64,000 nucleotides of DNA, taken from assembly GCA_010909165.1 (NCBI GenBank), contig MU008177.1, positions 930,001 to 994,000 of the forward strand, in the 5' to 3' direction. Within the stretch, counting starts at the first letter, position 1. Every line of letters starts with the position of its first letter. Both the position numbers and the translations under genes were made by a program. This stretch comes from Anthoceros angustus (taxonomy: Eukaryota; Plantae; Anthocerotophyta). Shown here one piece after another: positions 33,153-64,000 of the stretch. The notes under the pieces were generated by a model that saw nothing but the letters and a program-made list of their open reading frames with translations, searched no databases and was not told where the DNA came from.

Positions 33153-36100
33153 TGTAAACGATCTGGTATTGGAAACTCCCTGTTGGATTGTGTCTTTGAG
33201 TGATTTTTTGTTTTTTTTTGTTAAGTTTGGTGTCAAGAAGAGCTAGGTTATGAGTAGGAAGGGATATTTATAGTAGAAAGTGTCCTTGGCCTATGAGTTT
33301 TTGGGGTTGTTTTGTGGGTTAAATAATAATCGGTCCTTGGACTATGAACTCGATACTCCTTGGCCTTTGGTCTTGGAATATTTAATAAAAGGCCTATATA
33401 TGGGGGGGGGGTCCCCATATTTGGCAGGTCCGTAGGCTAGAGGTCGAACCAACCGGCGGTAGTTGAATTGGTGTGTGGTCACGATTGTGCGGGACTATGT
33501 TTCAAGACGGTTGGCGAATCTCGGGCGGTCGTGGAAGGAAGGAGCGGTCGCGGAAGAAGAAGTGGTAGGAAGCCGGCTGGCCGAGAGTTTCCGGGAAATA
33601 TAACCCTAAGGGAACTCGGAAAGGCACAGGCGCGCTGGCGGGGGTAGCTCCAGACGATCCCGACAGGCACGAGCTCGCACGAGGTCAGAAGGGCAGCCCG
33701 TGGCGGCGGGAGCTCGCGATTCTCGGAAGGAAGAAACCCCGGGGATTGACCAAGTTGGAGATTCGAGGCGAGTTATCAGCAATTGAGGCGTGGGCGTGAG
33801 GGTTTTGCAGAGCATGGCGCCCAAGGTTGCAGTGAATTTGCCTAATGGCCAAATATGGACCATTGAGGGTCCGAGGTGGAGGATTGGTGAGGGAGCCGGG
33901 ACTTGGGATCATGGAAAACAAAGGAGAGTTTATGGGAGGATTTTCCGATCAAGAACGAGGAAGGAGGACCCATAAATTCAAAGAAGGACGAAGGGCCAAA
34001 GCGACCAAATCGGAGGAGTGCGGAGATAACATGGGCGGGAGTAGTGGCATCCTAGGAATAGAACTTTGGATAGGATGCCATCTTGGACCTAAGGCCGTCC
34101 GAAATTGTAGGGCGCTGCTCAAATTTTAGGACTGGAAAGTCCGGTGGCTATGACGCCCAAAGAATTGTATAAAGGGGCTTGGTTGTGCCCCTCACATCGA
34201 GATAACTCTGGTTGAGATCCCCACGCTGCGTGGCTGGTTGGAGACGTCCGATTGACAGAGGTGGTGTGCGAGGCGCTCCTAGGGGTGGTCGAGCTTGCGC
34301 AACCGGGGAGGAGGGGTGATAGAGCAATCTTGACAAAGGAGGAGGAAACCAAGGGATTGGCGGGGGTCCGGAGCTTGCTCGTAACGCGGACGGGGGTTCT
34401 TCTTTCCTTCACCCTTGTTCCCGAGTTGTGTTCAAATTGAGAGAGAAGTGTTGAGTGGATGGAAGGCTCATAATGAGGAGAGAGAGAGAGAGAGAGAAGA
34501 TTGGGTGAAGGAGTGATGAACCTGCACGCACGAGGTGTAAGAGGAGTTGAGAAGGGAACTAATTGAGAGACTACGGTGGAGATTTGTGTGGATCCAAAAG
34601 AATCCAAACCGGTCTTGGTGGAAGTGTGCACAAGAGGAAAGCTCCTTGTAAAATTGTGTGAGTGTGGCGCCTTGTGTGTGTGTGTGTGTGTGAGGGATTT
34701 GTGGAACTTTGGTCCCTAGGAATCGGTGTGTGTGTGCATGAAGTGTGGAGTGCAAAGTCCGATCCGGTACGCAGACGCCTGCGGATCCGCGCGGCCGAAA
34801 TAAGTCGCTAGGGTTTGGCGTGGGACCCACCGAGTCAAGCAACTACCCAGAGGTGAGAGCCGCGTGTGGAATAAGATTTGCGGTCGTGGAATAAGATTTG
34901 TGGTCGTGGAATAAGATTCGTGGTTGTGGAATAAGATCGTGGAATAAGATTTGTGGTCGTGGAATAAGATTCGTGGTTGTGGAATAAGATCGTGGTAGTT
35001 AGACAAGTCGGAGGTAGTAGTAGTTGAGTAGATAGGTAAGAGGAGTAATAGGTAAGTCCCGACTTAGGTGAAGGTCGAGCGATAGTTAGCGCCTCGGCAC
35101 AAACCATTCCCTTGGGAGCGAATCCTAAGCCTACAACGACATTGAGGGTGAATGTGGACCTCACGGTGTCCCTAGACACAAATTCACACTCCACATTTTG
35201 GCGCTGTCGGGAATGAATCACAAGGACGAGGTAGAACTAACCATAGCCTAAGTAGAGTCTAGCATTACTAGATTGATAGATGGATGCCTCGGGTGAAGAC
35301 AAGCGACTGATCCGATGGGGAAACGCGGCAAGCGACAACGCAAGCAGGAAGATTGAGAGAGTTACGAGGAGGCGGGGGAGATCACTTGGACGAGGAAGAG
35401 GAGCAGGAGTCGACTGAATCGGGGATCGGAATCGGATCATTCCCAACTCTCACTACGGCGGTAAGGGCCGTACCCAACCCGACCCCGCCTTTGATCTCCG
35501 CTCCAGATTGCCACCGTCACACCAAACTTGTGGTCACCGACGAAGGTATCCGCCAACTCAGCTGCTGAAAGTACTACCACGGTAGCTATGACTACTACTC
35601 AGTTGTTACCACTAAGCACCCACCTGCTGTATGGAGAAAGAAGGGCCATGAGGATCCCGACGAGTTTGTCGAGCTGCTTTGAGCCCGACGCCACAACCGT
35701 GAGGAGGATGCGAACGTGCCCACTGCTTTATGGAGTCTTGCGAGCGGCCAAGTGGTACAAGCGAGAGTACATAGCTTTCCACACCCCAACCACCTTTGAG
35801 GCCTTGAAGAGGGCTTTTTGTGAAAGGTTCAGAGGAGTTGATGTGGAAGGATATGTCTTGTCCAAGCTTGAGAGATTGCGGAGAGGGCAGAAGGAGACGC
35901 TGCAGGCTTATGTGGAAAGGTTCCACACCGGATCGGCCGGACCTCACTCGGAGTTAATGGCAACTGGTTTGCAAGAGGATTGGGCGGAGATGGGAAGCAC
36001 GACGCTCCAAGCTGAGAAAGACTTGGATTGGGCGATCAAGGCCGCCCGAACTACGAGAGGAGTCCAATGCGAGAAAAGAAATCAAGAAGGGATACGGAGA

Positions 36101-39100
36101 CAAGAAGAAATCCAGAAGAAGAAGAAGTACTACTCATCCTCCGATGACAGCCCACGGAGGAAGATAGCTCTCAGACTCCGGATAGTTCCACGGAAGAAGA
36201 GACCATGATAGCTCGGAGGAAGATTCGTCGAGAGATGAGCGTAGAAGGAGAGAAAGAAGGAAACGAAAATGAGTGGGAACTAAGACGCGCAGGAAAGGAG
36301 CTGTATATGCAAAGAAGGACGCGGAGTGTGTGAGAAGAGAGGTGGAAACAAAAAAAAGGTGGAGCAACAAGGAACAAGATGGAGGAAATGATGATCAAAC
36401 CGAGAAACTTCATCTCAATGCCATAAAAGACCACGAGAGGAGAAGGGCTACGGAGCGCTCTTTCTCAACTTGCAGGGCACTCGAGGTCGAACTGTCACAA
36501 GTGCAACTGGCTACGAGGAAGAGGAGGAGGAGATGTGCTTGGAAGATACATACCAAATTCAAGAGGCGACACCATTGGCACCAAGACTTTGTACCCCTCA
36601 AGTTTACGAAACTCATGCATGGGCATTCGCAATCGATGGCAAGGAACCCCGCAAATGAGTGCCATTCAATTACTTGCCGAGGATTCGGCATCTTGCCAGT
36701 GCCCCTCCGCATCTCGTGGGAATGGTGATTTTGAGAGGTCAGGTGTGGATTGCAAGCAATCGTGCGGGCGTGCCTCGCCGATAAGAAAACATGTGAGGAT
36801 TGCTCAACCTCCTGACGGCAACCCACCCACCCATACAAGAAATGCTGCAAATGCAAGTCAAGATGCGCTCATGGCGTATGGGAGGATTCCGAGGCCAGTC
36901 GAGGAGCCCGGAAGGTTTGGGGATATGGATAGTGGGTATTATGAAACTCCGCCATGGCCGTCGAACGCGAGAGAGGAAGGCGACACCCTAAGAAGGGGGA
37001 ACGGGGAAGAAGAGAAAGAAGGAAGATTGGGAGCCTCCATAACATCCAGTGAGGAGGAAGTCGTCTTCATCAGAGGAAGGAAAGGGGTCCAACCACAAAA
37101 TGCCAACGAGGACTCGATGCAAACGAAAAGGGAGGCATGAATCCCGGATGGGGGCAACGAACGCACACCCCAACGCAATTGCGATTTTGGGGCACCAATG
37201 TAACCCCTTAGCAATGAACCCGCTGGATTCGAGGTGACGTGCGAAAAGAAGACCGAGGGAGTGGAACTCGAGTCGACACATCTGGCGAAAAACCCGCGGA
37301 GAGGATGAGTTAGGCGTTTCCGCCAGATGTCGAAGGAAGTCATGGAGATGATCCGAGAGGAATCGAATGCACCACCACCCAACCCACCCACCCACCCACC
37401 CACCCACCCACCCATCCTGCTTCACGACCGCGACACGGAGCTACCGTTGTTGAAACGAGTGGGGTGGCGCGAGAGGAGAACACCATGTCCCTTTCAATCG
37501 CGGAGGCCATCATGGACCAAAATTCATGATAACATTTGGACTCTTCTCGTGGACAATCCGAGGTACCGCCAGCAGATCCGCATTGAAGGCAAGACAACCC
37601 AAGAAGAGGCCCTTCCCAAAACAAGGCCGAGGCCCTTGCAGAACATGGTGGCCATGGTGACCAAGGTCCCGCTGAGCGCAGATAGAAATCTCGGATGCGT
37701 TATCAAGAAAGTACCTCGGATTCGGTCCGGGGTCAACATCATGACGGAGGAGCGTTAATGGAGATAGAACACACATCCAAGGTCTGCGTCTTGCGGACAT
37801 GTCCATGATGACACCGGGGAGCCGATCGAGTTCTAACCCATATTGGTACCATTCCGCACCTTATGGACTATGTGGTCATCAAACGTAAAGCTCCCGGATA
37901 TGACGTTTTGATTGGCCGGACGTGGATGGGGTACTGCACCTTCAAGTGGGCAAGGAAGGAAGTGGGCTTCAAACCTGGACTGGGACCCCAAGGTTAAGGA
38001 AGGGAGGATATGTTTATCTTGGAGTCGAGATACGACGCAGGAGAGACGCCACGGAAAGATGGCTATACCTCTGTAGAAGACACATTTGGGGAGGAGGATG
38101 AGAAAGAGAAGTTCCCGCTTTGCCCACATTTCTTGGTCGGATGAAGAGCGGGACTATCGAAGAGACATTCCCACTCCATCACTGGTGGGTTGTTATGGAG
38201 TGACAGCTTGATCTGACTGTGGAAGGTACTTGCTAGTGGAAGGTGGAGCAGCTTGTGGAAGGTGGTGGGACGGATGTGGAAGTTCTTGTTCCCGATGAAG
38301 CTTTGTTCATGGCGAGATGGAGGGGCGGCCGCGAATCGGAAGACGGCAAGTGATGGTGGTACAAAGAATGAGAAGGGAGATCCGGATACACCAGCCTACT
38401 TATTCGAAATATTTGAGTTCCCGAATCGGGCAGCATCCTGGACCTTTCAAGGCAACAAGATGCCTCGCATTATTCGAGTCCATTTGTCCGCCAGAGGCTT
38501 ATATCGAGGGACCGACGGAAGAGAAAGGTTGTGGGTGGTACCGTGACTTGGACCTACCATATGACAATGACATATATGCACTTTCTGCAAGCTTCACCTT
38601 CGATGGATGGGGCCATATAAAGTCCTTGAAGTTTTCGCAAATGGCTCCATACCCAGGCTAGATTAGGCGACCCCTACCAACCAGGTCAACGGTTGGAGAG
38701 TCAAGAAATATTACATGAGTTGGCGAGGGCGCCAACAAATGAGAAGGGAGTATGTAAACGATCCGTATTGGAAACTCCTGTTGGATTGTGTCTTTGAGTG
38801 ATTTTTGTTTTTTTTGTTAAGTTTGGTGTCAAGAAGAGCTAGGTTATGAGTAGGAAGGGATATTTATAGTAGAAAGTGTCCTTGGCCTATGAGTTTTGGG
38901 GTTGTTTCGTGGGTTAATAATAATCGGTCCTTGGACTATGAACTCGATACTCCTTGGCCTTTGGTCTTGGAATATTTAATAAAAGGCCTATATATGGGGG
39001 GGGTCCCCATATTTGGCAGGTCCGTAGGCTAGAGGTCGAACCAACCGCAGAGTTGAAAGTGTGTGGTCGCCGATCGGGGACTATGTTTCAAGACGGCGAA

Positions 39101-40791
39101 CGGCGGTCGTGGAAGGAAGGAGCGCTGAAGAAGAAGTGGTAGCGAAGCCACATATCGAGAGTTTCCGGGAAATATAACCCTAAGGGAACTCGGAAGGCAA
39201 GGCGCGGGCGGCAGCGGGTAGCTCGAGATCTCGAGGGCACGAGCTGCACGAGGTCAGGCAGCCGTGGCGGCGGAGCTCGCGATTCTGGAAGGAAGAAACC
39301 CTGGGGGACTGACCAAGTTGGAGATTCTGAGGCGAGCTATCAGCAATTCGAGGCGCCATGGGCAGTTAGGTTTTTGCAGGAGCATAGCGCCCAAGGCCGC
39401 AGCGGAAATTTCGATCGCCCAATGGCCAAATATGGACCATTGGAGGGTCCGAGGTGGAGGATTGGTGAGGGATTGGGATCATGGAAAAATGGTGGAGAGT
39501 TTATGGGAGGATTTACCAGACCAGGAACGAGGAAGGAGGACCCATAAATTCAGCAAAGAAGGACGAAGGGCCAGCGACCAAATCGGAGGGGGAGTGGAGA
39601 TAACATGGGCGGGGAGTAGTGGCATCCTAGGAATAGAACTTTGGATAGGATGCCATCCTAGACCTAAGGCCGTCCGAAATTGTAGGGGCGTCTCTTCGCG
39701 TTCAGCCGATTTTAGGACCTGGGAAGTCTGATGGGCTATGACGCCCCTAGCAATTGTATAAAGGGGCTTGGTTGTGCCCCTCACATCAGATAATTCCTGG
39801 TTGAGATCCCCACGCTGCCTGTGGCTGGTTGGAGACGTCCGATCGACGGAGGTGGTGTGCGCGAGACGCTCCTAGGGGTGGTCGAGAGCTTGCTCCGCAA
39901 CCGGGGGGAAGGGGGGTGATAGAGCGCTCTTTGCTGACAACGGAGGAGGAAACCAAGGGATTGGCGCGGGCGGGTCTGGAGCTTGCTCAACGCTGGCCGT
40001 GACGCCGGGGTTCTTCTTTCCTTCACCCTTGTTCCCAGTTGTGTTCAAATTGAGAGAGAAGTGTTGAGTGGATGGTTGGAAGCCCGCGAATTGAGGGAGA
40101 GAGAGAGAGAGAAGATTGGGTGAAGGAGTGATCAACAGACGCTGCGCGAGGTGTAAGAGGAGTTGAGAAGGGAACTAATTGAGAGACTAATGTGGAGATT
40201 TGTGTGGATCCAAAAGAATCCAAACCGGTCTTGGTGGAAGTGTGCACAAGAGGAAACAGCGTTCCTTGTAAAATTGTGTGAGTGTGGCGCCCTTTGTGTG
40301 TGTGTGAAGCGGTGAGGGATTTGTGGAACTTTGGTCCCTAGGAATCGGTGTGTGTGTGCATGAAGTGTGGAGTGCAAATAAAGTCTGATCTGCGGCATGG
40401 ACGCGCGGGGATCCGCGGCGCCGTGCGCCGGAAATAAGTCGCTAGGGTTTGGCGTGGGACCCACCTCGGTAGTCGAAGCAACTACCCGGTAGTGGTGAGA
40501 GCCACCGCGTCGTGGAATAAGATTCGTGGAATAAGATTTGTGGTCGTGGAATAAGATTCGTGGTTGTGGAATAAGATCATGGTAGTTAGACAAGTCGGGA
40601 GGTAGTAGTAGTTGAGTAGATAGGTAAGAGGAGTAATAGTGTAAGTCCCGACTTAGGTGAAGGTCGATGGCGATAGAAGTTAGCGTCTCTTGGCACAAAC
40701 CATTCCCTTGGGAGCGAATCCTAAGCCTACAACGACATTGAGGGTGAATGTGGACCTCACGGTGTCCCTAGACACAAATTCACACTCCACA
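33153..40791 (+). mobile_element. Non-autonomous Ty3/Gypsy (Tat/Athila-like) element: LTRs 33153-35195 and 38753-40791, gag plus protease only, TSD GCGAC
   Basis: ~2.04-kb TG...CA direct repeats, PBS TGGCGCTGTCGGGAA at 35199 and PPT GAGAAGGGAGTA. Gag AAKWY...FEALKRAFCERF; protease SGVNIM and YDVLIGRTWM. GCGAC at 33148-33152 and 40792-40796. Confidence 0.92.
34866..34990 (+). repeat. ~20-bp tandem repeat GTGGAATAAGATT(T/C)GTGGT(C/T) in the Gypsy LTR (7 cores here, 4 in the 3' LTR at ~40512-40578)
   Basis: Seen directly. Confidence 0.9.
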
Positions 40792-42691
40792 GCGACTCCA
40801 ACCATCGCGCCGCGGTGTTCTCTTCAGCGCCTAACCTGTCACAATGTCAGGGCATCCGTTAAGAGGTGTGTTCTCCCTCTCTTGGATCCCCCAACCGACG
40901 CTTACCTTTTAAGCTGGCTGAAGTGGAGCGAGCAACCGTTCTGGAGGACATAGGCTTCACCAAAAATCTTGATCTCCTGTTGAAGAAGCGACTTAACCCG
41001 GCTACGCTAACACCTGGTTACCCACTGCACCACACAAGAGATCACGATGTCTGGTTCCGGTGGAGGTTCGGGTTCTGGTGGTCCATCTCCACCACCACCC
41101 TCTCCTCCATCTCCGCCGTTGCCTCCTCCTCCACCATCCTCTCCTCCTCAGACTCCGTTCCCTCAACAACCCTCCTACACCGTTGAATTTAAGGAGTGGG
41201 ACCGCTTCAACGGTACCAAATTCGAAGTTTGGCGTGTGCGCATGACTTCTGCTCTACAGGCCAGACACGTGTGGGGAGTTGTTAGTGGCACTGATAGAAC
41301 CTCCCGCCATGCTTGCTACAGGATGACAAAGACAGATGGCAGAACTTAAATGATGTCGCGCGTGCTTTCCTCATCAGTGGGCTGGATGAAGTCCTCGTGC
41401 CTGACATTGCTTATCTCCTCAAAGCCGACGAGATCTGGAAGCAGCTCCTCCAGACGTACGAAGCAAGGAACATTCTTACCTTGTGTGCAGTGCGTGGGGA
41501 ACTCTTCTCTCTCCGCTTGAAGGAAGGGGAGAAGGTGTCACCTTTCAACCTTCGTTTCCGCCAGCTAAGAGCTCAACTTCTCAACCTTGGTTCATCGTTT
41601 CCTGAACTGGATGCTGTTGCCCAGTTCCTTTCTTCTCTACCTCCCAGCTACCAGACCTTTGTCTCTGGCTATGGTGCTTCCATACGCGCAGCTGACAAGG
41701 CAGTGGCTGCTGGGAAGGCCGCCCGAATCAGTTTTACTGATGTAGTCGGGGCCCTCTTACAAGAAGAGCAAAGTCGAGCACACTCTGGTCAGCACGGTCG
41801 CATCAAAGTGGACAAGGTGCTCTACACAAAGGGGCGGAACTTTGATAGGGGAAAATCAAATACCTCTGGAGCCGGACCTTCTAAGCTTGCTCCAAACAAA
41901 CGGACTGGTACTTGCAACTGGTGTGGCATTCAGGGCCACTGGGAACGAGAGTGTCGGAAGAAGAAATCAGGTGAACCGCGTAAAGCTGAGAAGCCCTATC
42001 GTTTGGCTGAAGCACACGTGGTTGCCAAGGACAGAACTTCCTCTTCCACCGCTGGCAAGCCACCAGTGGTAATGACGGTTTGTTTCTCGTCCTCTGCAGC
42101 ATCCACTCCACATCGCTGGTACCTAGACTCGGGTGCCACTTCCCACATCTGCAATGACAAGTCGTTTTTGAGTCATTTCCGGTCATCTCAGACGTCTGAC
42201 AAAGTGCTGTTAGGGGATGAGGTTACGCGTACCGGCTTGCGCATTGAGGGCTCTGGCTCATGTCGTTTTCGTCTTCATGATGGCTCAGTTCTTCACCTTG
42301 ACAACGTCCTGTACGTCCCACAGATGGCTAAGCACCTTCTATTAGTTAGCCAGCTCATGTCCTTACATATGTACAACCTGCTATTCACGTCTTCTAGCTG
42401 TTTGCTTAAGAAGAGTGGGGAAGGAGGTCAGGTCGTAGCAAAAGGACATTTGGTTCACGATCTTTATCAACTAGACTTGCAGTGCATACCTGTTGCCACT
42501 GCTCACGTTGCCCAACTATCACAGTCTGCACAGGCCAGTCTTTGGCATGCTCGATTGGGTCACGCTAATCATGACAAGTTGATAAAGATGTCTAACGGTC
42601 TAGAGGTTACCTCTCATGCTATAGAGAGCCACTTCCAAAGTGCTTCAAATCCTTGCCACTTTGTGATGCCTGCGTGATAGCCAAGCAAAAG

Positions 42692-45600
42692 TAACAATAT
42701 TATATAGATTATGTAGAAATAAATCACATCATTAAGTAATTACATTGTATATCAAGAAAGGGGTTAAAGTGCTTATGCATAAAAGACAACTTAAACTAAA
42801 TGTGAAAAGACATAACGTTTCTCAAGCGCCGTAACCCTAATGAACGGTCATGTACTATAGCTTTAACTAAACCCAATTAATACAACCCTAATCATGACTC
42901 CAACACATCTATTCTGTTACTCCCACTTGTTGATCATGATTTAATTGTGATCCTCCGAGCCTCTGCGGCTCGTGGGCCGGAGTTCACCGTGTATTGATTC
43001 TTCTAGCGCCATAGCCCGCTTCTCTTATGGCCGGTTGCCTTCTAGCCATATCGAGCAAGATGCCTTGTTCCGGTGTGAAGACGGCACAAATGAGGTGCGC
43101 CTTCCTCTTACGCATACTTCCTAAGTCTCTTACTCTCGAGGTGCTAGCGCAAGATTGCCGCTTTTCACCATGTCTCCGTCCTCGTCGGTCCGATCTGCTC
43201 TCAAGCGCCAGCTCAACCTCGTGACGCCCGGGCGATTCTTGCAAGAACAAGCCCCAAGTGAGCTCCGCTGCAAAGCCGCAAAGAGAGGAAGAGGACGCCC
43301 AAGGGAACCACAAGGCATCTTAGAGAAAGAAGAGCCGCGGTGACAAGTCCGTGAAGAAGCATCCGTTGAGTACCGATCAAGATGAAGCTCAGCCCTCACT
43401 GCCTCTGAAATTTCCTAGGCCCAACGATTATCTACGGAGACTAAAGCGGTGAGTTATGCAACTCTTGCTCGTCCTCAAACGCAATCACAAGACTGACTAT
43501 GGAAGAGTCGAGATCATCATGAAGCGTGTTGATGTGCGTCGCGCCTACCGAGACGCGTTGTAAGCATATATCGTAAGTCCCCTTTGCCGTTTACATCCTG
43601 CTGTTTCCATTTATCGACCAAGCCTTAGCCATCGATTGCTAACTACTCCCTTTGTCTCCGAAGGTTCCAACTTGAGGATTGAAGAAGAGGAAGACCTTGA
43701 AGCAGAGGAGAGGATTTCCTATGAAGAGCGTAGGAAACGTAATTCTCCAAGGTCGATGAGAGCTTCTCATCCGTTAGCGACTACGGAAAAGATTCATATG
43801 AGGATGAATCGCCTCGAGTCTTCTGATATGGAGAGGAGGTTACTCCTCGGATCCTAGTTTCGACTCGGTTTTAGGTTTGCTTGGATTAGACCTTGTTGGT
43901 AGTTGAGGTCAAGAACTCGCTTGAGTCCCCAAGCCCCAAACTCGAACATGTTTGTTGTGAGCTCTTTTGCCTTAGTGTATGTCCACAGGATTGTCTTGAG
44001 TCGGTACATATTGCGCTTCAATTTTTCCTGTTGTCACCAGACCTCTGATGTAGTGGTATTCGACCTCCACATGTTTCGTGCGTGCATGAAACACCGGGTT
44101 CTTAGCAAGTGACATGGAACCCTGATTGTCTGTGTTAATTGCTGTACAGGTGGGAATTGGTATACCCAAGTCTGGAAGAGTAACTTACCACACAATTTCT
44201 TTAGCTGCTCAGACTCTATACTCTGCTTGATCGAGGATAAAGCCACGATGGGCTGTTTTTGCTCGACCATCAGATGTCCTCCAAGAATCGATATGACATA
44301 GCCGAGATTTTCTTTATCATCACTGCATAGTCAGTCGTCCAGAAACTTCAAGGTCTAGGGTTTTCCTTCTCATGTTTGTATGTCGATGCCCATGTTGGTG
44401 TGCCTTTTAGGTATCGGAAGACACGTTTCAAACTAGTCCAGTGTTCTTGACCTGGATTCTCCAAGAATTGCGAGAAACGCTTGTGGTGTAGGCAACTTCT
44501 AACCTTGTTGTGTTTGAAGCATATATCAACTTCCCAACACCACGCCTGTAAGGAATTCCCTCATATGTTCCTTTTCTTCTTGTGTTGAAGGGACATGAGC
44601 TTGCTAAGCCTCGATCCTGTGGGCATGGGTGTTGCGGCAGTTTGGCATCCTTGAGGCCAAGTTGCTCTGCACTTTCCAGAGATATCTAGGGCATGTAAGT
44701 GTCATAATCCTAGCCTGCCTATTTCTTTGTATGTGTATACCAAGGCAGCTATGTAAAGGTCCAAGATGGACATTTTGAATCTCTTAGCAAGCATGTCATT
44801 ATTTTCTTTATAAAGTCCTGTTGTGTAATCAAGTCGTCAACGATACCGCCCAATGTGATTACATCTTCTTTTCAGAAATGTAGAGGCTACTGCGCAAGGC
44901 TTTTAGTGAAGTCTAGGGCTTGGAGTTCGAGTCCAACTCGCATTCCACTTCATAGCATTGTTTAAGACCATACGGACTTGATAAGTCTGCATACATGGTC
45001 CTCTTTCCTTCCACCTCAAAACCGGAGGTTCGCATGTATATCTCGTGTCCAGCCTTTCCATGCAAGAAGGCGCTTTAACGTCATACATTTGCGTTCATAA
45101 TCATTGTATGTTGATACCGCAAGGAGGACAGTGTGGCTAGTTTTACAACGGGAGCGAAAGTCTCTAAGTAATCAAGTCCGAGAATCAGAGAATCCTCTTG
45201 CTACTAGCCTAGCTTTGTACCTCAAAGGTACCATCATTTCACCTTTAATTTGAAGACCCATTTACAAGACACCATTTTCCGCCAGGTAATTTTGCTATCT
45301 CCCATGTGCCATTTTCTATGAGCGAGTCATATTCTAAGCGTATAGCTTTCTCCCACTCCTTGTGATCGTCTAGTCAACGCCTCGGCGGGTTTGAGGTTCT
45401 ATGGGATCAAGAGAGGTTGCGCGACCCTCACATTATGGGAAGAAGTTCAAGTCAGGCACAATAATAATCGGGGTCTTCACACGAGTAGGATATCGCGGAC
45501 GAGTTCGCTCGGGAGGTGCTTCATCGGGTTCATCGTATGTCCTCAAGCGTGTCATCGCCGTATCAAGCTATGGGGTCGGTTGAAAGACATCGGGTTGTGT

Positions 45601-48600
45601 ATCATCGCGTCGAGGAGGAAATTGATCTGTATGGTGTTGCGGGCATAGTGGTCGTCATCTAGAGCTTGTGCATCGCATATTCCCCACCGGCGAGCAATAT
45701 TCTCAAGTGGAGCTAGACGAGTGCCATGGTCGGAAAGATCAAAATGAGTGATCGAGATGTCATCCGCGCCGTCATCTGGAGGATGTCGTGCTCCCACAAG
45801 CCCAAGTCGTGCCTCATTAAAGGTAACACTCAGCATAAATAACTTTGTTGGTGGGAACATCATACGGTTTGTATGCTTTTATGCCCTCTGTATATCCCTG
45901 ATGAGTAGCTTTCTAGCTTTGTCTCGAAAGCTTCTTCCGCTTCTCTTTAGGGATAAAGGCGTAGGCAAGGCAACCAAAGGTCCTTAAATGTTTAAGAGAT
46001 GGCTTCCTTCCTGAACACCTCATATGGGGTCTCCGTAGTTAGTAGGTAACTTGCGTGAGGTAAGTTGAAGTCATAAGGGCCTCACCCAATATGGCAGCAG
46101 CGTCATGGAGCAAAGAGGAGGTCATTTCACAATGTGAGGTTGAGGCGCTCGCCACCCCGTTCTGCGTGGAGTGTAGACAAGCGTGAGTCATCTACCTATT
46201 CCTTCATCCTTGCAATAGGCCTGGAATTCATGTGATGTGAATTCCCCACCATTATCGATCTTAAGGTTTTGTTTGCTTCCCAGTCCGTTGAAACTTGATA
46301 TACTCCTTGAAGTAGGAGAAACACTCGCTCTTACATTTCGGGATGTATGTGGTGACAAATCTGCTCTTGTCATCGGTGAATGTGAGGAAATATTTTCCTC
46401 CACCAATTGAATCACAGGGAGAGGTCCACACATCTGTATGGACAAGTTCAAGAAGATCACTTGCGGTGAGGGGCCTGATTTTGAAGGCGCTTGATGTCTC
46501 TTAGAAAGAACACAAGCCTCACATAATGGAATTGAGGTCAAGGGACCAATGGGTCCATCTGGTAAAGGTCACTAGCACTAACTTTGCGGCTTTGCCATGT
46601 GTGGATGACCTAAGCGGGCATGCCACAACGAGATTTAGTTATCTGTTGCGATGCCTTGGAGACATCCTGTCGTGGGACTCAACTATTCCACTATTCAAAT
46701 GGAGACGAAAGTCATGGTCCAAGACCCATATGCAAGTACCTTCCTATGGTCAAATGCATCTATAATCGGCAATCTGTTCTAGTAAATAGCACATGGCTGC
46801 TATTATGCAGATCTTCTAAGCGAGATGAGGTTTCTTGTCATGTCGGTACATAGTAGACATCCTGCAATTTGAGGGTTAGTCCGGTGGAACGGCAAGTCTC
46901 TGATACCTCGAGAGACAAGAGACCTATCGTCTCAAGATACACATCGTCACAAGTGGCACAGTATGTTAAGAATGCGTTCTGTCAAAGCAAATATGAGTAT
47001 GGCTCACTGTCGAGATACCACTCTGCAGTGGGTTTAAAATATGCTTTGGCAGACAAGCATGTGGGTAGCAGAAGTGGACTTGCAAACTCCCTTGTCCCAA
47101 CTGTTAGGGCAGATGGAGTGTTTTGCTTCTTGACCACAATGTGTGTCTCAGCTGAAGATCCCTCCTTGCGAGGAATTCCAGCCTGCTTCTTCCGACACTC
47201 ACGTTCCCAATGGCCAGGTAACTTGCACCAGTTACAAGTACCTGCCTTTTTGGTTTTCTTGTATAGAGTGTTGGTTCCCTGTTGACCAGCACCCTTGAAA
47301 TTACTGCTTCCACCCTTTGAGAAGGTCCTTCTACCTCCTCGTCCTTGGTTGGATGTGTACAGGGCCTGCTGCTTCCCTGCACGCCTATAGTTGGTCTTGC
47401 TTGCTTCCTCTTGAAGCATTGAGCTCACCTGAAAAGCTCATCTCGGCATTTCCACACCTTGTTTCTTGGCTAACAATGTAGCTGTTCGGCAGGATGTGAA
47501 GTCACAAAGTGTGACCACGATTCGGAAGAGAAAGAAGGAGTCTCATCACCATTTCATCGTCTCCTATGGTGACTTTGGAGGCACCACAAGCCTTGAAGCT
47601 AGGGTCCCAAGGTACTCACGTGCTTTTCCACCGAGTCCCCATCCTTCATTCTCAAATTTTGGAAGTTTCGTAAAAGTCATTGCACCATGTTACGCCTCGT
47701 AGAGTTCCTTGAGGCGAGTTAGGATTTCGTGAAGTCTTCACCCAAGATCTGCCTCAACATTTCGGATGTTAGGCCAGCGTATGAGGTACTTTCTCCATCT
47801 TTTTAGCTAACCAACTGCCTTCGATATCCCTTCGCGGGATACTCTACATTTCCGTTGCATATTTAAGGAGGCCTCTCATCTCGAGAACACCCTCCATCCG
47901 GATGAGCCGATATCAAAGTCATTGCCATTGAACTGTCCTTTTCTTTGAAGGATTCACTACTACCAAAGTTAGAAGACAAGGTATCACCCATGTTTCGGGT
48001 ATAGACTCTTCTATGTGTTCGACTGCTTTATTGAAGACGTTTCCAAAATCGTCTAGATCACTTTCGATCGTTCCATTCATTATTACTTACGTGCATGTTG
48101 GTTTTGACGCGTTGCGGGGTTTGATCCCATGCAATCTGCGTCGCTATCCTAGCACTTCTCATCTCATATTTGTTATACGTAAGTTGAACATGAAGGACAA
48201 GAATTTGGTGAGTCAAACTTCCTTTCACGATTTGTTTTACTTACGTGCTTGCAGGCAATACCTCACGAATCTTTGGGTTAGACAACAACTCGGGTTTTAA
48301 TAGCATTACAAGTTTGTAATCTATATGTGCAAGTTCTTTTAAATCCGCAAATCGATACTAGTCGAAACATGACAAATTTGGTTGAATCTATTTTCAACAT
48401 TCCTATTGTTAGTTTCAAGGCCTGAACAATTGTGTTTACCGGTTGATTGTCGGCCGGTCATGAGGAAAGCTGCGTTGGTGTACAATTTGCAAGTGGTTGA
48501 TTTTGTACAACGCTCCTCTCCGTGAATGTCGGTCGAGTTATTGGGAGCAGCAATTCAAGTAGTGTGTTGAATGCTCCCTTGATGTCTCTGTGCGCGGTTG

Positions 48601-49308
48601 AGTCCTCTGGCTCCATTGTTGGACACACACATGTAATTGATTGGCAAGGTAAATCACGACTGACTCGTCGATTCCTAGGATTGTTGTTCCCCTAGGATTT
48701 TCCGGGAGCAAGGTAGATATAATTTGCCATGGCCTTGAGCCGATTGTTATATCTAAAATGCAGAATTTGCATTATAGAGATCCTTTTATATAAATCATAT
48801 ACACTAATCACTATTAGGCGGTTGTTCTAGTATCTGCATGGAATTGTCTAAACGACAATTTAATGGAAATGCATTAGAAAATCTACTGATTCAAGACGAT
48901 TCTGTTAGATTTTTCTAAAAGAAAATATCAGAAACTATTTTCTTGAAAATCTTCTTGTTTCTTTCTTTTGAACTCATTTTCAAAATAGGAAGACTAAAGA
49001 AGATAAATTGCACATTTTCTAGTGCAGAATTTCAATGCGCATCTTCCTAGATGCATTCTACAAAGTAAGCTCGATACCATAACAATATTATATAGATTAT
49101 GTAGAAATAAATCACATCATTAAGTAATTACATTGTATATCAAGAAAGGGGTTAAAGTGCTTATGCATGAAAAGACAACTTAAACTAAATGTGAAAAGAC
49201 ATAACGTTTCTCAAGCGACGTAACCCTAATGAACGGTCATGAACTATAGCTTTAACTAAACCCAATTAATACAACCCTAATCATGACTCCAACACATCTA
49301 TTCTGTTA
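42692..49308 (-). mobile_element. Inner Ty1/Copia element with 228/229-bp TA...TA LTRs (42692-42919, 49080-49308), TSD AAAAG
   Basis: The LTRs differ at about 3 positions. PBS TGGTATCGAGC next to the right LTR and PPT AAGTGGGAG next to the left LTR. CNWCKLPGHWEREC, WYLDS, DNGGEF and HARTKHVEVEYHYIR. AAAAG at 42687-42691 and 49309-49313. Confidence 0.92.
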
Positions 49309-52300
49309 AAAAGGAGATACCTTTTCCCAAGGCTGTTGCCCACCGTGCTTCTCAAATTCTGGAATTAGTACATGCGGATATTTTTGGCAAGATTCATGTT
49401 CCATCTTTGGGTGGTGCCCAATACTATCTAACAATCACTGACGATTACAATAGATATTCTTGGACTTACCCTTTACGTTTGAAGTCGGACACTTTTGGTG
49501 TCTTCCAAGAATGGCTGCAGATGGCTCAACGTCAGACTGGGTGCTTGCTCAAGTGCTTGCACAGACAATGGAACAGAGTTTGTGCACGGCCACTTCAACC
49601 AATATCTCCTTGACTTGGGTGTTGTTAGGCAGCTGATTGTACCGTACACTCAACAGCAGAACGGTGTTGCCGAACGCCGTAATCAAACTCTGCTAGGCAT
49701 GACAAGGAGTATGTTAGAATGGTCTGGTCTAAGTAAAGCTTTCTGGGCAGAAGCTGTGGTGACAGCAACTTACATCCTTAGCCGTATTCTGACAAGTGCT
49801 GTGGTGGGGCAAACTCCTTTTGAGGTTATGTGGCACAGGAAACCAAGTCTGCTCCACCTTCGCGTGTTTGGCTCTCCAGCATATGCATACATCCCTGAGG
49901 AGAAGCGCAGGAAGTTAGAAGATCAAGCAAAGCCTCTGTGTTTGTCGGGTATGGGGAAGAAGCTAAGGCATATAAGCTTTATGACACACTCATCAACACA
50001 ACTGTGTTCGCAAGGAGTGTGACTTTCAAGGAGCTCTTATGTCCAGCTAAACCTTATTTTGATTCTTACCCCGCGGAGGCATTTCCTCACATGAGACTTT
50101 TGATTTCGATGTCCCTTCCTCGTTCCTACAAGATGATGCTCCCTTTGTTGCACCCATCGCAAAAACATCGGATCCGAATTTAGTTGTCCCACATGTGGAA
50201 GGGGATCCTTTTGATGATCATGGCGGGGCAGATTGCGAGAAGAAGGCGATATGGTAGTGCTCTGATCCTCCTCAACTTCCTGACCAAGTTGTGCAAGTTC
50301 TGGAGAAGGAACCTGAACATGACGATGGAGGTTTCTTGGATCACACAAAACCCGATCTGCTGATGATTACTTGTTCAGCAGACTGACAAGTTGGAGTGGA
50401 TACGGTGATGATCCACTGTTGTTGAAGAAGAGCTGAACCTCCTATCGAGGACCTTGTTCAACTGGAGACGTTATCCTTCTCGAACCGTCTTCCACCTTTC
50501 GATGGTTTGTACCTCCTTATGCTTCCATTGATTTTCGGCATCCCAGGGCTAGTGTTTCTATCCCTCTAGGGGCGTCTTCTTCACAAAACCCTTGCAGGTT
50601 TGAGCCTGTCTCCTATCAAGAGGCAATTACTGGCCCCGATAAGGATCACTGGATTCCTTCTATCCAGGATGAGTACGATTCCCTAATAAAGAATGACACT
50701 TGGGAACTCTGCCCTCTGCCAAAAGGAAGAAAAGATGTCAGCTGCAAGTGGGTTTTCAAGCATAAATTAAATGCTCAGGGTGAAATCGCCCGCTATAAGT
50801 CTCGGCTTGTTGCCCGCGGTTTCTCTCAAGTCCCTGGCATCGATTTTACAGAGACATTCAGCCCTGTTGTCAAGACACAGTCAGTTCGTATGATCCTAGC
50901 TCACGTGCCAATGCAGGACTTACAACAAATGGATGTATGTACCGCTTTTCTCTATGGTAAATTAGAGGAAGACATCTACATGGAGCAACGAGGGTTTGTC
51001 GATCATGAACATCCAGATCGGGTTTGTCATCTCAAAAGGCGATTTATGGTCTCAAGCGATGCGGAATGGTACAAAACCATTGATGCTTACCTCAAGTCTA
51101 TTGGTTTTCAGCAGAACCCTGGAGATGCCAACGTTTATGTTTACTTCAAGGATGGTCACCTCGTCGTACTGGCCTTGTATGTCGATGACGCCATTCTCGC
51201 GTCAAATGATCCAGGGCTGTTAGCCTGGGTCAAAGGAATGTTGCACCAAAAATTCGACATGAAAGATATCGGGGCTCTTACCTTTGTGTTGGGTGTTCAG
51301 CTGGTCCGTGATGAGGCTGAGCATACTATTATGCTTCACCAGGCCAAATACATTGCAGAGACCCTTGGTCGTTTCCATTTGGATTCTGCCCAGTCTGTTT
51401 CTACTCCTGGCATTGCCGGTGTTAAGCTTTCCCGTGACCAGTGCCCCCAAACAGATGAGGACCGCCAGGCTATGTCTCACATTCCTTATCGTCATGCCGT
51501 TGGTTGTCTTAACTACATCAGCTGCTGGACTCGCCCGGATATACAATATGCTGTTAGCTCTGTCTCTCAGTTTCTTGATGATCCTGGTCATGCCCACTGG
51601 GGTGCAGTTAAACGTATCCTTCGGTATCTCAAAGGCACCATGAATCACGACTTATGCTTCCGAGGTCGAGATGCACTTACTCTTTGTACTGATCTTGGTA
51701 GGCCCGCGATCCGGATGCAGTGAGCATTTGACCTCTTGCTTCATGTTATCCGATGCGGCTATCCACTGGAGCTCCAAGAAGCAAGTGTCGATCGCTCTGT
51801 CCTCTACTGAGGCCGAGTACAAAGCCTTGACGGAGGCTGCCAAGGAAGCTACAGGGGCGGCATTTTTCTGTCAGACTCGGTTTCCATGATCTCGGCCTAC
51901 TCCTATCCTCTGTGACAACAAGTCCACGATTGCCATGACTGCTAACCTCATTTCCACGCCCGTACTAAGCACATCGAGGTGCATCACCATTTTGTCAGGC
52001 ACTCTGTGGAACAGAAGCGAGTCAAAATTCAGTATGTGCCAACTAATTTAAACACGGCAGACTTGCTCACCAAGTACCTGCCTGCACACAAGCATCATCT
52101 CCACATGGAGGCTATGGGCATCAGGGCCTGCTCTTAGCAGCAGCCTATGTTCTATTCTGCAGGTTGTGGTGGATGAATCTATCCTGAGCACCAAGTCGCA
52201 TGACCACAGCAACTATGGAACATGATCACTTATCCTGTGGAAGCTGACTGGCGGTGGCTATCTAGAATTGCTCCTCCAATGCTTCCTCTTCAGGGTTTCG

Positions 52301-52612: not shown

Positions 52613-54290
52613 AGGGAGGCATGGCTGCCCTAGCCTCGGAGGAAAGAGAGTCCTTGGCCCACTTAAGGGAAGCCTACAAAGGGAAGGCCCCCTCCTCATC
52701 GCCCAAGACAAAGGCCTCCAAGATGGGAACATCCCGAAATAAGAAACGAGCGATGAAGACGGGGGCAGAGAGGGCCCAGCTCCAATGAGGCGTAGGAATG
52801 CCTCCCCAACGATGATAGGGCGCACCCAGGCATGGGCTTCTCCATAGCCAGTAACCTTTTGGCCCCTAACACCCGAGAGATCCAATGAGGAGTCTATCTC
52901 ACCCCTGGCTTCTGCCGGCGCCAGAATGAAGAGCTAGAAGGATCCTCGAGAGCAAAGTATGAGAAACTGCTAGAAGGATCCTCGAGAGACTGCTAGAAGA
53001 GAGAGTGCTCAATGAGAAACTGCTAGAAGGATCCTCGAGAGCAAAGTAATCTCGAAGGTGATCGTAGACTGTCCCAGACAAACCACCCGCAGAAAGTTGC
53101 GGGGCAGTCGTAAGAGCCCTACCGAAGATCGCCCTTTCGAGACAAAAAGGCTCTTCCAGCACGTATTCCAGGATATCCTGTGGAATGAGGTCATCAGGGG
53201 CCGGATGAAGGGCACGGAGAGCAGAGATGGTGTCCTCAGAGGCTAGCGCTACCGGCTCTAGGCGAAGTGCCCGGGCAGCCCTCGCGTATTCCCCAGCACG
53301 GCCTAGCAAGAGACACTTCTTGAGCCGTGCCTTGGCGAGATCCTAACAGACCCGATCCACCTTGGCAGCCTCCGACCCGGATCTCGCTGCGTACCCCCTC
53401 TCTTCCTGCAGAGCTTCCAAGTCCCCGGCCCGGAACTGACGGAGACGAGACGCCACCTCCCTATGGCCGGAAGAACCACACTTGGAGCAACGAAGACACC
53501 ACAGGGAGAAAGGAGGAGTTCAAGCCGCCTCGCCCCGTGAGGTTCAATCAAGGTAATCCAGAAGAAGGAGGTAGGCAAGACGTTAACGTGCGCATTAGAA
53601 ATGCCAAAAGGCGGGGTCCCAGCGCGAGCAGTGGCGGATAATGCAATTGCATTGACCACTACCGGGACTGAAGGGGCGGGCGAGGAAGCATCCAAACTCG
53701 GAGCCAAATGTACAGCCCCACTGGATGAAGCAAGCCTCACCTGATCCTCCCAGGTGGTTCAGTCGAAGTCCTTGTGTTTGTGCCCGATGTCATATTTCAT
53801 CCCCTAGACCCCAGAACACAGCTGGGCGCAGACTGGATGGGGGGTGTCCTTGACTGCCACTAAAAGAGTGGACTACACCATAGGGGAGAGGGCACGAACA
53901 AACGAAAACGGCATAATTCAGGGAACAACCAATGACGACTGCCCTCTGCCCGAGGGTGTTAGGGTCGAGGGGGAACCAGGTGCCAAGGACAAAGCGTCCC
54001 CAACATTTACCAGATATACAGAGTGTACGCTCCGTATGGTGAGCCCCAATAGACTAGCCAAAGGCCCCCGCCCAGAGAGGCCTCAACCCGCCAAAACACC
54101 TGACAACCCACCGCAGACCGCTCAAATCCTCAAACAAAAACCTAAAACCTGCACAGTGAACATGCCGACCGCCAAAGCGAAAAGTTGGGCCCCGCCACTT
54201 CAAAACTCCACCCCTGCCTAAAAACCCAAAAGCCGCCTCAGCAGAACCCTAAACCTGTAAACCCTAAACCTGTAAACCCTAAACCTGGAA
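52613..54290 (-). mobile_element. 5' half of the same CRE-like non-LTR retrotransposon (most of the RT core appears deleted)
   Basis: GEYARAARAL..LASEDTISALRALHP, SAGGLSGTVYDHLRD and VRPIIVGEAFLRLI. It joins the 31-32 kb part across the Copia TSD. Internal ~35-bp tandem copies at ~52930-53045. Confidence 0.7.
54244..54285. repeat. Telomere-like interstitial repeat (CCCTAAACCTGTAAA)n
   Basis: aaccctaaacctgtaaaccctaaacctgtaaaccctaaacc seen directly. Confidence 0.8.
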
Positions 54291-61485: not shown

Positions 61486-61732
61486 ATGTAGGCCGAGGTT
61501 AAATAGTGTGGTGCTGGGCCCCTTTTATGGCGATGCAAGTTGTGGTGATGTGTGGTGTGCCGGTGAGCAATGTATGCCAGTGATTGTGTCGAACCTGAAG
61601 AAAAACACTTAGAAATTTAAGGAGGAAGTGGGTATCGAGGAAGGATTTTTGGAAGATCGTATCCAGTAGGATTGAAGATGAAGGCATAACGATCACGGAG
61701 AGCAGGCGTCCAGTGACAAGGAGGAGGNTAAT

Positions 61733-61924
61733 AAAAAAGAAACAGGAAAGTCGGCACAAGAGTTTATACAATTGAAATTAATAGATATTGCAAAGAAAAA
61801 TTTTTGATACAAATCAGTAAGTGAAATTGCTTATGAGCTTGGATTTAAATATCCTTCACATTTTACCCGTTTATTTAAACAAAAGGTTGGTCAATCTCCG
61901 GTTGAATATAGAACGTTAAATTAA
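61733..61924 (+). other. Bacterial (Bacteroidetes-like) AraC-family HTH regulator C-terminal fragment directly after the N at 61728; probable contaminant
   Basis: KKETGKSAQEFIQLKLIDIAK...KSVSEIAYELGFKYPSHFTRLFKQKVGQSPVEYRTLN*. AT-rich, with a local indel stop. Confidence 0.85.
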
Positions 61925-62119
61925 GTATTTTCCAATTGAGCACTCAATGCGGTGCGTTGGCTATTGCAGGTCTTTTGCAGGTTGGGTTTGTGCGATGGTT
62001 ATTTTAGAATTTATAGTTGTCCCTTTGTGAATTGCGGGTGTCCAAACAGGGTTACACACAACGTTGGGCGGCTTTATGATGGGCTGGGAATAGCGACTGG
62101 TCAGTAGATTGCTTCGACA

Positions 62120-62238
62120 GGCCTGGGCCCTGGGCCTGGGCCTGGGCCTGGGCCTGGGCCTGGGCCTGGGCCTGGGCCTGGGCCTGGGCCTGGGCCTGGG
62201 CCTGGGCCTGGGCCTGGGCCTGGGCCTGGGCCTGGGCC
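62120..62238. repeat. (CCTGGG)n run grading into telomeric repeats
   Basis: About 20 hexamers directly contiguous with the CCCTAA/CCCTAAA tract. Confidence 0.9.
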
Positions 62239-62436
62239 TAAAACCCTAACCCTAACCCTAAACCCTTAACCCCTAAACCCTAACCCTAACCCTAAACCCT
62301 AAACCCTAAACCCTAAGCTTTGTCCTCGATAAGGATCTCATTTCCTTGAGGATTTTTCCCTCTGCTCTCTTTTCTACCCGCCTGCGGTCGTTTTTGGTTC
62401 TCTTTTTACCCTAAACCCTAAACCCTAAACCCTAAA
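62237..62436. repeat. Telomeric tracts: mixed CCCTAA/CCCTAAA at 62237-62316 and (CCCTAAA)4 at 62409-62436, separated by ~92 bp of unique sequence
   Basis: Arabidopsis-type plant telomere motif seen directly. Confidence 0.93.
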
Positions 62437-62467
62437 CTAGTTTCGCCAAAAGGCTCATCAGTGGGTA
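62429..62467 (-). ncRNA. Minimal type I hammerhead ribozyme (Penelope-type)
   Basis: Minus strand: UACCCA-CUGAUGA-GCC UUUU GGC-GAAA-CUAG-UU-UAGGGU. It has the full catalytic core, a 3-bp stem II and a palindromic stem III (AAACUAGUUU). Confidence 0.82.
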
Positions 62468-64000
62468 TAATCCTTATTACAATTGTGCAGATGGAGCACC
62501 ACATATATAGACCAAGAATGGCCAGAAATCTCGATGAGATAAAGAGTATTATCTGGATACGAGAAAAATCTAGAATAATTTAGATTAAAATAATAGGCTA
62601 AAAGATAATAGAAAAAATAGATCCCTCGAAAAATAAACTAAAGAGGCTGAACCTTGGCTCGCACCAAAACAGTACCCAATTTCTTCGGATTCCGCCAACA
62701 GACGATTGGCTTAGAAAAGAAGGACAAACGGAACTTTTTGCATTTCTGCATGGAGTATAGGGTTTAGGGAAGCCCCCAGGCATAGCGACTTACTCCAAGG
62801 GGAGTAGTCCAACTTGATTACGATGGGCCTCATCTTTGGGGCGGTGGAGCAATAAACACAGCCTACTCGGTAGGAAACCTTCGAGAAGCAAAAGCGAAAA
62901 AGCTAGGATAACCTAGCGCCTATGATAAAAGGAAAGCCGGACGGAAAGATAACCGGAGAAGGAACTCTCGCGAATCACATACCGACGGAGCTCGCTGACG
63001 ACAAAAGAAATCTTCTGGTGTCGAGGATGGAACGAGCGCCAGGGGAGATACTGGTAAATGTTGAGCTGCTTTTGGAAGCAGCGAGTGGGGAGAAGACCGG
63101 TAGAAGGGAAGTCAGGTCCCTTGAACATGGTGAAGTTCAGGAAGTCGCAGGATGAGTCAGAGATGACCCAAGTGAGATTGATGGAGGCACGAGGTCGAGT
63201 AAAACCGCATTGATCCTCCAAAAGATCCCTATCACGCCCGATAAAACCATCATCGATGAACCTTTTAAGGTCCAACAGATGGACAACAAGAGGGTGTTTA
63301 TAGGCCGACTTCAAGCAGATAAGAAGAGGCGAAGACACAAGAAAAGTGGTGCCCATGGCGTCTGCGAACCCGCACTGTAGAAAGCACCATCAAACTCTAG
63401 ATAGTTGTTGTACAGGATCAGGGAAGCCGCATCCAAGATGAGATCCGCCAAAGGTTGGAGAATGTATCCAGAGGCAATAATGCGCTCACGGAGACATCGG
63501 AGACCAAGGTCAATGGGGATACTAGGATAAAGGGATTCTACATCAAAAGAGAAGAGGAGAGAGGAAGCAGGAATCTGCTTCGACTGATAATCTCTGATGA
63601 GGGTGGTAGAATCAAGGAGGTAGGTGGCTTGGGACTTCAACACAGGAAGAAGCTGATCATGTAACCACTGGGAAAGGTGTTCAAAGACATACCCCACCGA
63701 GCTGCAGATGGGGCGGCCAACAAGCCGAGGCTTATGGACTTTGGGAATGATGTAAAAGACAGACCCGAAAACACGAGGAGGGCTCATGGAAGAGGAACGC
63801 CAGTGCGAGCATCTATGGGGACCCGAGGCCGTATCTAGACCGGAGAGAGCAACCTCTCTCAATCGTTCGAGAGGGACTACGGGACGCAGACATAACGCCG
63901 GTCAAAGAGTTGCCTAATGGCCTCGCCAAATACCAAGTGCGATCCATCAAGACAAGGCCGAGGTTCTTGTCGGCGCTTGATGACAAGGTTAGGGTTGGAG
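62437..64000 (-). mobile_element. Penelope-like retroelement (RT core plus thumb, frameshifted; 5' part beyond the window)
   Basis: FYIIPKVHKP..GRPICSS, FSFDVESLYPSIP, NNYLEFDG, AMGTTF, KRFIDDGF and YQYLPWRSFHPRHQK...SELRRY. No C-terminal GIY-YIG seen. Confidence 0.9.

What the first reader, a model, noticed from the sequence alone, without database searches (positions are those of the whole stretch)
62409..62470. Hammerhead ribozyme completed by the telomeric repeat, with its cut site at the Penelope/telomere junction
Seen: on the RT-sense strand the element ends ...UACCCA CUGAUGA GCC-UUUU-GGC GAAA CUAG UU|UAGGGUUUAGGG. The predicted cleavage triplet (GUU) falls where (TTTAGGG)4 begins. The only available 3' strand for stem I is the telomeric UAGGGU pairing with ACCCA, with one bulged A. 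Established: Penelope-like elements carry minimal HHRs with palindromic stem III that can work as dimers. Inference: either the ribozyme is target-completed, so it trims read-through RNA only when the copy sits in telomeric repeats (or cleaves telomeric RNA in trans), or cleavage makes a ..GUU 3' end that anneals to a C-strand ..AAAC primer. Either would couple ribozyme activity to telomere targeting.
Basis: partly seen in the sequence, partly recalled or inferred. Interest (0 to 1): 0.85.

Follow-up and report, generated by a model that had tools for sequence, protein, structure and literature searches.

The report
Truncated retroelement ribozyme capped by telomere
A broken copy of a known kind of telomere-dwelling plant retroelement ends within a few bases of its ribozyme's cut site and is capped with telomere repeats; its relatives carry the missing half of the ribozyme themselves, so this is most likely a one-off scar, not a ribozyme that needs the telomere to work.

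Summary
A type I hammerhead core (62461-62441, minus strand; model built from relatives E=4e-6) lies at the 3' end of a broken, endonuclease-free, Coprina-type Penelope-like element, and four TTTAGGG repeats overlap the GUU triplet.

The target-completed reading is not supported. All 23 hammerheads in related elements carry their own 3-7 bp stem I, with compensatory changes. None of 57 motifs has telomere repeats at the cut. The nearest group already reads GUU|UG (six share CUAGUU exactly), so GTTT is element sequence and the window first departs at the bulged A. Telomeric tails swapped onto relatives pair as well or better in 5 of 12, so the pairing is accidental. Relatives place C-rich repeats on the sense strand, the known orientation; this copy points the other way.

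Most likely telomerase extended a broken end at the 4-nt GTTT seed. A copy made from ribozyme-cut RNA stays open (about 0.27), because the chance of hitting this seed is about 1 in 33 or less. It is one indel-rich locus beside bacterial DNA; no second copy or reads were found. The scan noted it only on this same DNA.

The parts
62441..62461 (-). Hammerhead core: CUGAUGA, 3-bp stem II with U4 loop, GAAA
62435..62441 (-). Minimal palindromic stem III (ACUAGU) and N17 = U; predicted cut between 62435 and 62434
   Evidence: sequence; CUAGUU identical in 6 of 12 nearest relatives
62462..62481 (-). 5' strand of stem I; its element-encoded partner, expected to start UGGG, is absent from this copy
   Evidence: the expected partner is inferred from complementarity and from relatives
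62434..62437 (-). GTTT shared by the element family and the telomere repeat; the junction lies somewhere in these 4 nt
62409..62436 (-). Four perfect TTTAGGG repeats in phase with the GTTT seed
62317..62408 (+). 92-nt spacer, 73% pyrimidine on the plus strand; possibly the 3' tail of a second, canonically oriented and 5'-truncated copy
   Evidence: 1% of window tiles are this skewed; no homologue found, so the identity is inference
62241..62316 (+). About 11 mixed 6- and 7-nt telomere repeats, the likely chromosome-end cap
62504..62509 (-). TATA-like box 48 nt upstream of the core; 8 of 12 relatives have one 35-39 nt upstream
62758..62769 (-). C-rich telomere-complement repeat inside the RT ORF, read as Leu-Asn-Pro codons
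   Evidence: codons CTA AAC CCT/CCA, preceded by C, in 6 of 6 relatives that have LNP at this place
62638..64000 (-). [quoted passage not shown]

Best explanation
This is the 3' end of an ordinary Coprina-type element whose hammerhead once had its own stem I strand. The copy lies with its 3' end toward the chromosome end. It lost everything after the family's GTTT, and telomerase added TTTAGGG repeats onto that 4-nt seed. A later event added the 92-nt piece and a new telomere cap. The apparent pairing of UAGGGU with ACCCA is a by-product: the lost strand began UGGG, one base short of the telomere repeat. Shown: the family encodes GUU|UG and its own stem I; the seed overlaps the cut; the pairing is no better than in swapped controls. 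Inferred: that this family also had its own strand, that telomerase made the repeats on a broken DNA end, and that the remaining ribozyme is weak or dead.
For: 23 of 23 relatives have a contiguous 3-7 bp stem I of their own; the window has 1 bp. Stem I covaries: 3 of 4 pairs change on both sides, and the only unpaired cell at 1.2-2.2 is the window. 0 of 57 motifs in related loci have telomere repeats at the cut. N17=U in 10 of 12, 1.1=U in 12 of 12 and 1.2=G in 11 of 12 nearest relatives. With a telomeric tail swapped in, 5 of 12 relatives fold better than the window's -10.3 kcal/mol, while their own tails give -12.5 to -22.8 in 11 of 12. Relatives put C-rich repeats 87-461 nt downstream on the sense strand, as published for EN-minus elements (PMC8557442; PMC6431247). 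Plant telomere addition sites share 2-4 nt with the repeat (PMC12094224). In the one element tested in vitro, insertion did not need the ribozyme and no reads ended at its cut (PMC11167929).
Against: The seed that was used is the one at the cut site. A 3.9-kb relative has 33 GTTT and 126 four-base seeds, so the coincidence has a chance of about 1-3% per healed end; only the fact that the scan picks out such coincidences softens this. No sister copy of this family reaches the ribozyme (L001 ends before it). Most relatives are collapsed contigs that would hide rare junctions. How the copy came to point toward the telomere is not explained by the window.
Confidence: 0.55

Rival explanations
1. 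The end was set by the ribozyme, but in the donor RNA and with its own stem I. Cleavage left a unit RNA ending in CUAGUU. Either a C-rich telomere strand primed reverse transcription at that end, or the finished DNA copy ended there and telomerase capped it. This would be a rare second route that gives copies in the opposite orientation.
For: The 4-nt junction interval contains the predicted cut, against 33-126 other seeds per unit. The GUU triplet is kept across the nearest group. Inverted copies and priming from both target strands are known for other Penelope-like elements (PMC8557442 Fig. 2 legend; PMC11167929).
Against: One instance. 0 of 57 motifs in related loci end this way. In anole PAc, uncut RNA is the main template and no reads end at the cut. 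Selaginella has the same telomere repeat and uses GUC. A cut end carries a cyclic phosphate and offers only 3 nt to pair with (own knowledge).
Confidence: 0.27
2. The junction is an assembly or library artefact: a thin contig end built from one or a few long reads, joined through the shared telomere repeat.
For: An N join at 61728; Bacteroidota AraC DNA from 61729; a (CCTGGG)20 block of a kind seen beside telomeres in nanopore reads (PMC10521516; the related CCCTGG is shown to be a miscall in PMC9414165); 32 deletions against 2 insertions relative to L001.
Against: The repeats are perfect and in phase with the element's own GTTT, which a random ligation would not give. The ribozyme core and stems II and III are intact.
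Confidence: 0.11
3. Target-completed ribozyme: this family has dropped its own stem I strand and relies on telomeric RNA, in cis or in trans, so it cuts only when it sits in telomere repeats.
For: The telomeric strand can form 1 pair, a bulge and 4 more pairs with the 5' strand. No sister copy was available to exclude it. One distant relative (L005) has a weak own stem I and a 5' strand that pairs better with a telomeric tail.
Against: All 23 relatives, on several branches around this lineage, have their own strand. None has a bulge at 1.2. The pairing is matched by swapped controls. The element keeps the C-rich sense-strand repeat used for the opposite orientation, and no endonuclease is seen that could place it into repeats this way. 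Mismatches next to the cut site strongly slow hammerheads (own knowledge; no paper found). Trans cleavage of telomeric RNA would also need the substrate to supply stem III, which a 2-bp stem cannot hold (inference).
Confidence: 0.07

Closest known systems
Coprina clade of endonuclease-deficient Penelope-like elements, Selaginella moellendorffii type (XP_024523476.1; loci L003, L004, L087)
   Same: RT 47-49% identical over the first piece; no C-terminal GIY-YIG; type I hammerhead with palindromic stem III downstream of the ORF; C-rich telomere repeat inside the ORF; TTTAGGG telomere setting.
   Different: Selaginella copies have a full stem I, GUC at the cut and C-rich repeats about 200 nt downstream, with the 5' end toward the telomere. 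This copy stops at the ribozyme, is followed by G-rich repeats and points its 3' end outward.
Terminons and Athena elements of bdelloid rotifers (PMC6431247)
   Same: Hammerhead next to telomere repeats at the 3' end of an EN-minus element.
   Different: There the repeats are C-rich, element-encoded and pair with the G-overhang. Here they are G-rich on the sense strand and look added by telomerase.
De novo telomere addition (chromosome healing) in plants (PMC12094224, citing wheat breakpoints)
   Same: Repeats start in phase from a 2-4 nt seed in the broken sequence; here 4 nt.
   Different: The seed here overlaps a ribozyme cut site, and only four repeats remain before another insert.
Minimal dimer-forming hammerheads of Penelope-like elements (Cervera and de la Pena, PMC4209133)
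   Same: Type I layout, G10.1-C11.1 pair, palindromic stem III that suits a dimer.
   Different: The 3' strand of stem I is missing in this copy; no second motif lies in the window.
PLE-X / Chlamys elements of spike mosses and Chara (PMC8557442)
   Same: Plant, hammerhead-bearing, no recognisable endonuclease.
   Different: Those have an insertion in the RT fingers and target rDNA. The spacing between RT motifs A and B in L001 shows no such insertion, and full-length relatives are about 580-626 aa.

Membership tests
Type I hammerhead ribozyme | CUGANGA and GAAA core with stem II closed by G10.1-C11.1 | tested here: met
Type I hammerhead ribozyme | Stem III (A15.1-U16.1, 15.2-16.2) and an NUH triplet | tested here: met
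   C-G pair and GUU
Type I hammerhead ribozyme | Continuous stem I next to the cut site | tested here: not met
   1 bp, then a bulge, against 3-7 bp in 23 relatives; so it is a truncated hammerhead
Type I hammerhead ribozyme | Self-cleavage | not testable with these tools
   needs a bench assay; no RNA run was listed
Coprina-type EN-minus Penelope-like element | RT related to known Coprina members | tested here: met
   quick tree places it with L001 among Selaginella, Ginkgo, Cryptomeria and L088 (weak support inside that group)
Coprina-type EN-minus Penelope-like element | No GIY-YIG endonuclease after the RT | tested here: met
   translation ends in the same short C-terminal region as relatives
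Coprina-type EN-minus Penelope-like element | No N-terminal endonuclease | tested here: inconclusive
   the 5' part lies outside the window; full-length relatives carry no GIY-YIG domain
Coprina-type EN-minus Penelope-like element | C-rich telomere repeats on the sense strand near the 3' end | tested here: met
   in-ORF repeat at 62758-62769; the downstream tail is missing in this copy
Coprina-type EN-minus Penelope-like element | 5' end toward the telomere | tested here: not met
   this copy points its 3' end at the telomere tract; a trait of the copy, not of the family (L005 is canonical)
Telomerase healing junction | Repeats in phase with a 2-4 nt seed in the broken sequence | tested here: met
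   GTTT at 62437-62434
Telomerase healing junction | An intact allele or sister copy showing the lost sequence | not testable with these tools

The most novel reading that the evidence does not exclude
In this plant group of Coprina elements the GUU|U cut is kept because the cut RNA end matches the telomere repeat. Cleaved RNA can then be copied from a C-strand primer, or its DNA copy capped by telomerase, giving 3'-outward insertions that end at the ribozyme cut. That would be a direct genomic footprint of hammerhead cleavage in retrotransposition.
Probability: 0.15. Interest if true: 0.65.

Novelty: new member of a known kind. Interest (0 to 1): 0.27.

Why it matters
As read here it is a scar on a known kind of element and matters little. 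The role of hammerheads in Penelope-like elements is still open (PMC8557442; PMC11167929 found cleavage dispensable in vitro). If more copies were shown to end at the cut site, they would be direct evidence that cleaved RNA is used as template in vivo, and would show a second way for these elements to join telomeres. The comparison also gives a well-supported hammerhead family from plant-type Coprina elements, with a TATA box just upstream, which can be assayed.

Tried and rejected
Rfam at gathering scores: nothing; a type III reading lacks an upstream triplet and stem. MFE folding does not single the region out (z between -0.6 and +0.6). A second, decayed hammerhead at the far end of the spacer was suggested by a repeat match; it needs about five core changes and the model finds nothing there on the minus strand, so rejected. 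The spacer has no homologue in the window or in the fetched loci. The look-up of sequencing runs listed no run; none was listed, which does not mean none exists. Searches for sister copies gave only L001. Cryptomeria and one Logan locus came back without DNA. A pattern for core plus telomere repeat in viral and prokaryotic collections gave only single-repeat matches, none with a second repeat. Gladyshev and Arkhipova 2007 and Arkhipova 2017 could not be read, so I rely on papers that cite them. The tree is the quick version: three rows were dropped and several are badly trimmed, so I use it only for rough placement; broken ORFs were joined with X. The organism was not identified.

Full report
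Observation. The core spans 62461-62441, stem III is the palindrome ACUAGU, N17 is U at 62435, and the predicted cut falls between 62435 and 62434. Four perfect telomere repeats occupy 62409-62436, so they begin two bases before the cut. Rfam is not convincing on its own, but a model built from 12 relatives finds this one site in the window at E=4.3e-6. The motif is a real hammerhead of the Penelope-like element type.

The element. From 64000 down to about 62638 the minus strand holds the 3' half of a frameshifted RT. Its nearest relative is L001, 79% and 72% identical over two pieces; named relatives at about 47-51% come from Selaginella, Ginkgo and Cryptomeria. No GIY-YIG domain follows the RT, in the window or in these relatives. 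This is the endonuclease-free Coprina type. Published work says these elements attach to the G-rich overhang through C-rich repeats near their hammerhead (PMC8557442; PMC6431247) and that Selaginella copies have canonical hammerheads (PMC4209133). The fetched loci agree: C-rich repeats lie 87-461 nt downstream of the ribozyme on the sense strand, and L005 is 5'-truncated and capped at both ends. The window's element also keeps a C-rich repeat inside the ORF at 62758-62769, written with the same codons in six relatives. The family is therefore built for the usual orientation, and this copy points the other way.

Test of the main claim. I collected hammerheads from 91 related loci. All 23 examined have their own stem I of 3-7 contiguous pairs, usually with a distal stem; the window has one pair and then the bulge. 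On an alignment of the 12 nearest plus the window, 3 of 4 stem I pairs show changes on both sides, and the pair at 1.2-2.2 fails only in the window (the structure was set from these sequences, so the shuffle numbers are not probabilities). No motif among 57 has telomere repeats at the cut. In the nearest group N17 is U in 10 of 12, position 1.1 is U in all 12 and position 1.2 is G in 11; six have exactly CUAGUU. So GTTT is element sequence. Given the 5' strand ACCCA, the lost strand should have begun UGGG, which is the telomere repeat less one A. That explains the near fit. As a control I replaced each relative's own 3' side with a telomeric tail: 5 of 12 then fold better than the window does (-10.3 kcal/mol with an artificial linker, for comparison only), while their own tails give -12.5 to -22.8 in 11 of 12. 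The pairing with the telomere is thus not evidence of adaptation. The quick tree puts relatives with their own strand on several branches around the window's lineage, so target completion would have to be a private change in this one family. I could not exclude that directly, because L001 ends before the ribozyme and no other sister copy or run was found.

How the junction arose. The junction lies somewhere in GTTT at 62437-62434, in phase with the repeats. Plant telomere addition sites share 2-4 nt with the repeat (PMC12094224), so telomerase extension of a broken end fits. After four repeats comes a 92-nt piece, pyrimidine-rich on the plus strand like some relatives' tails, then a second telomere tract; this may be a short canonical insertion onto the new overhang, but no homologue was found. 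The weak point of the healing model is that the seed used is the one at the cut. A full unit has 33 GTTT and 126 four-base seeds, so this is a 1-3% event. A scan of many windows will report such events, but the number keeps a second route alive: the end was made by cleavage of the donor RNA, using its own stem I, and was then primed by a C-strand or capped by telomerase. Against that, no relative shows it, and in the one element tested uncut RNA was the main template and no reads ended at the cut (PMC11167929). I give healing 0.55, the cut-RNA route 0.27, artefact 0.11 and target completion 0.07.

Quality of the locus. An N at 61728 joins two contigs. The next 200 bases are Bacteroidota AraC DNA, followed by a (CCTGGG)20 block of a kind found beside telomeres in nanopore reads. 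The RT has 32 deletions and 2 insertions against L001, and an LTR pair elsewhere in the window has 84 gap runs in 2160 columns. The locus is probably a thin contig end at a chromosome tip. The frameshifts may be read errors rather than decay, and the junction may rest on few reads.

Verdict. A new member of the Coprina type with a truncated hammerhead and a telomere cap. The striking claim is not supported; a milder claim, that the ribozyme cut set this end, is open but rests on one locus. Interest 0.27.

Noticed in passing
window 62758-62769; L001 1553-1566; L003 and L004 9616-9629; also L002, L086, L088, L091: A C-rich telomere-complement repeat sits inside the RT ORF and is read as Leu-Asn-Pro with the codons CTA AAC CCT/CCA in all six relatives that have this motif, although the proteins are only about 45-65% alike. 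This points to selection on the RNA or DNA sequence, perhaps as a priming site. It may be part of what Gladyshev and Arkhipova 2007 described; I could not read that paper.
   Followed up: partly
window 62504-62509; L005, L007, L008, L009, L012, L013, L015, L086: A TATA box lies 35-39 nt upstream of the hammerhead core in 8 of 12 relatives (48 nt in the window). Transcription would start near the base of stem I, so the ribozyme would trim the RNA's own 5' leader; in this outward-pointing copy it would drive RNA into the telomere repeats.
   Followed up: partly
window 61729-61930: Bacteroidota AraC-type gene fragment, 74% identical to a Runella plasmid gene, right after the N join: contamination or a chimeric read.
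   Followed up: yes
window 62120-62239: About 20 copies of CCTGGG directly outside the telomere tract; probably nanopore miscalling of the C-rich strand, though one paper argues such blocks are real.
   Followed up: partly
L005 4456-4524: This relative's hammerhead has only a 3-bp stem I of its own, and its 5' strand pairs better with a telomeric tail (-17.0) than with its own 3' side (-8.7). Single contig, unexplained.
   Followed up: no
Cryptomeria japonica GCA_030272615.1: Head-to-tail array of the same element type with a period of about 4.3 kb; Ginkgo gene models also contain pieces. Coprina-type elements in gymnosperms were not mentioned in the papers I could read.
   Followed up: no
L088, L089, L090: The same 3.9-kb unit is assembled in different rotations in three runs, as expected for a tandem array or a circular form; it has two ORFs, a hammerhead and one C-rich repeat just before ORF1.
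   Followed up: no
window 54245-54287: Three copies of a 15-nt unit containing one telomere-like repeat each.
   Followed up: no
window 33100-40900 and 42690-49310: Two LTR pairs (about 2.1 kb and 230 bp); the second flanks a Copia-type element. The long pair is rich in small indels.
   Followed up: partly
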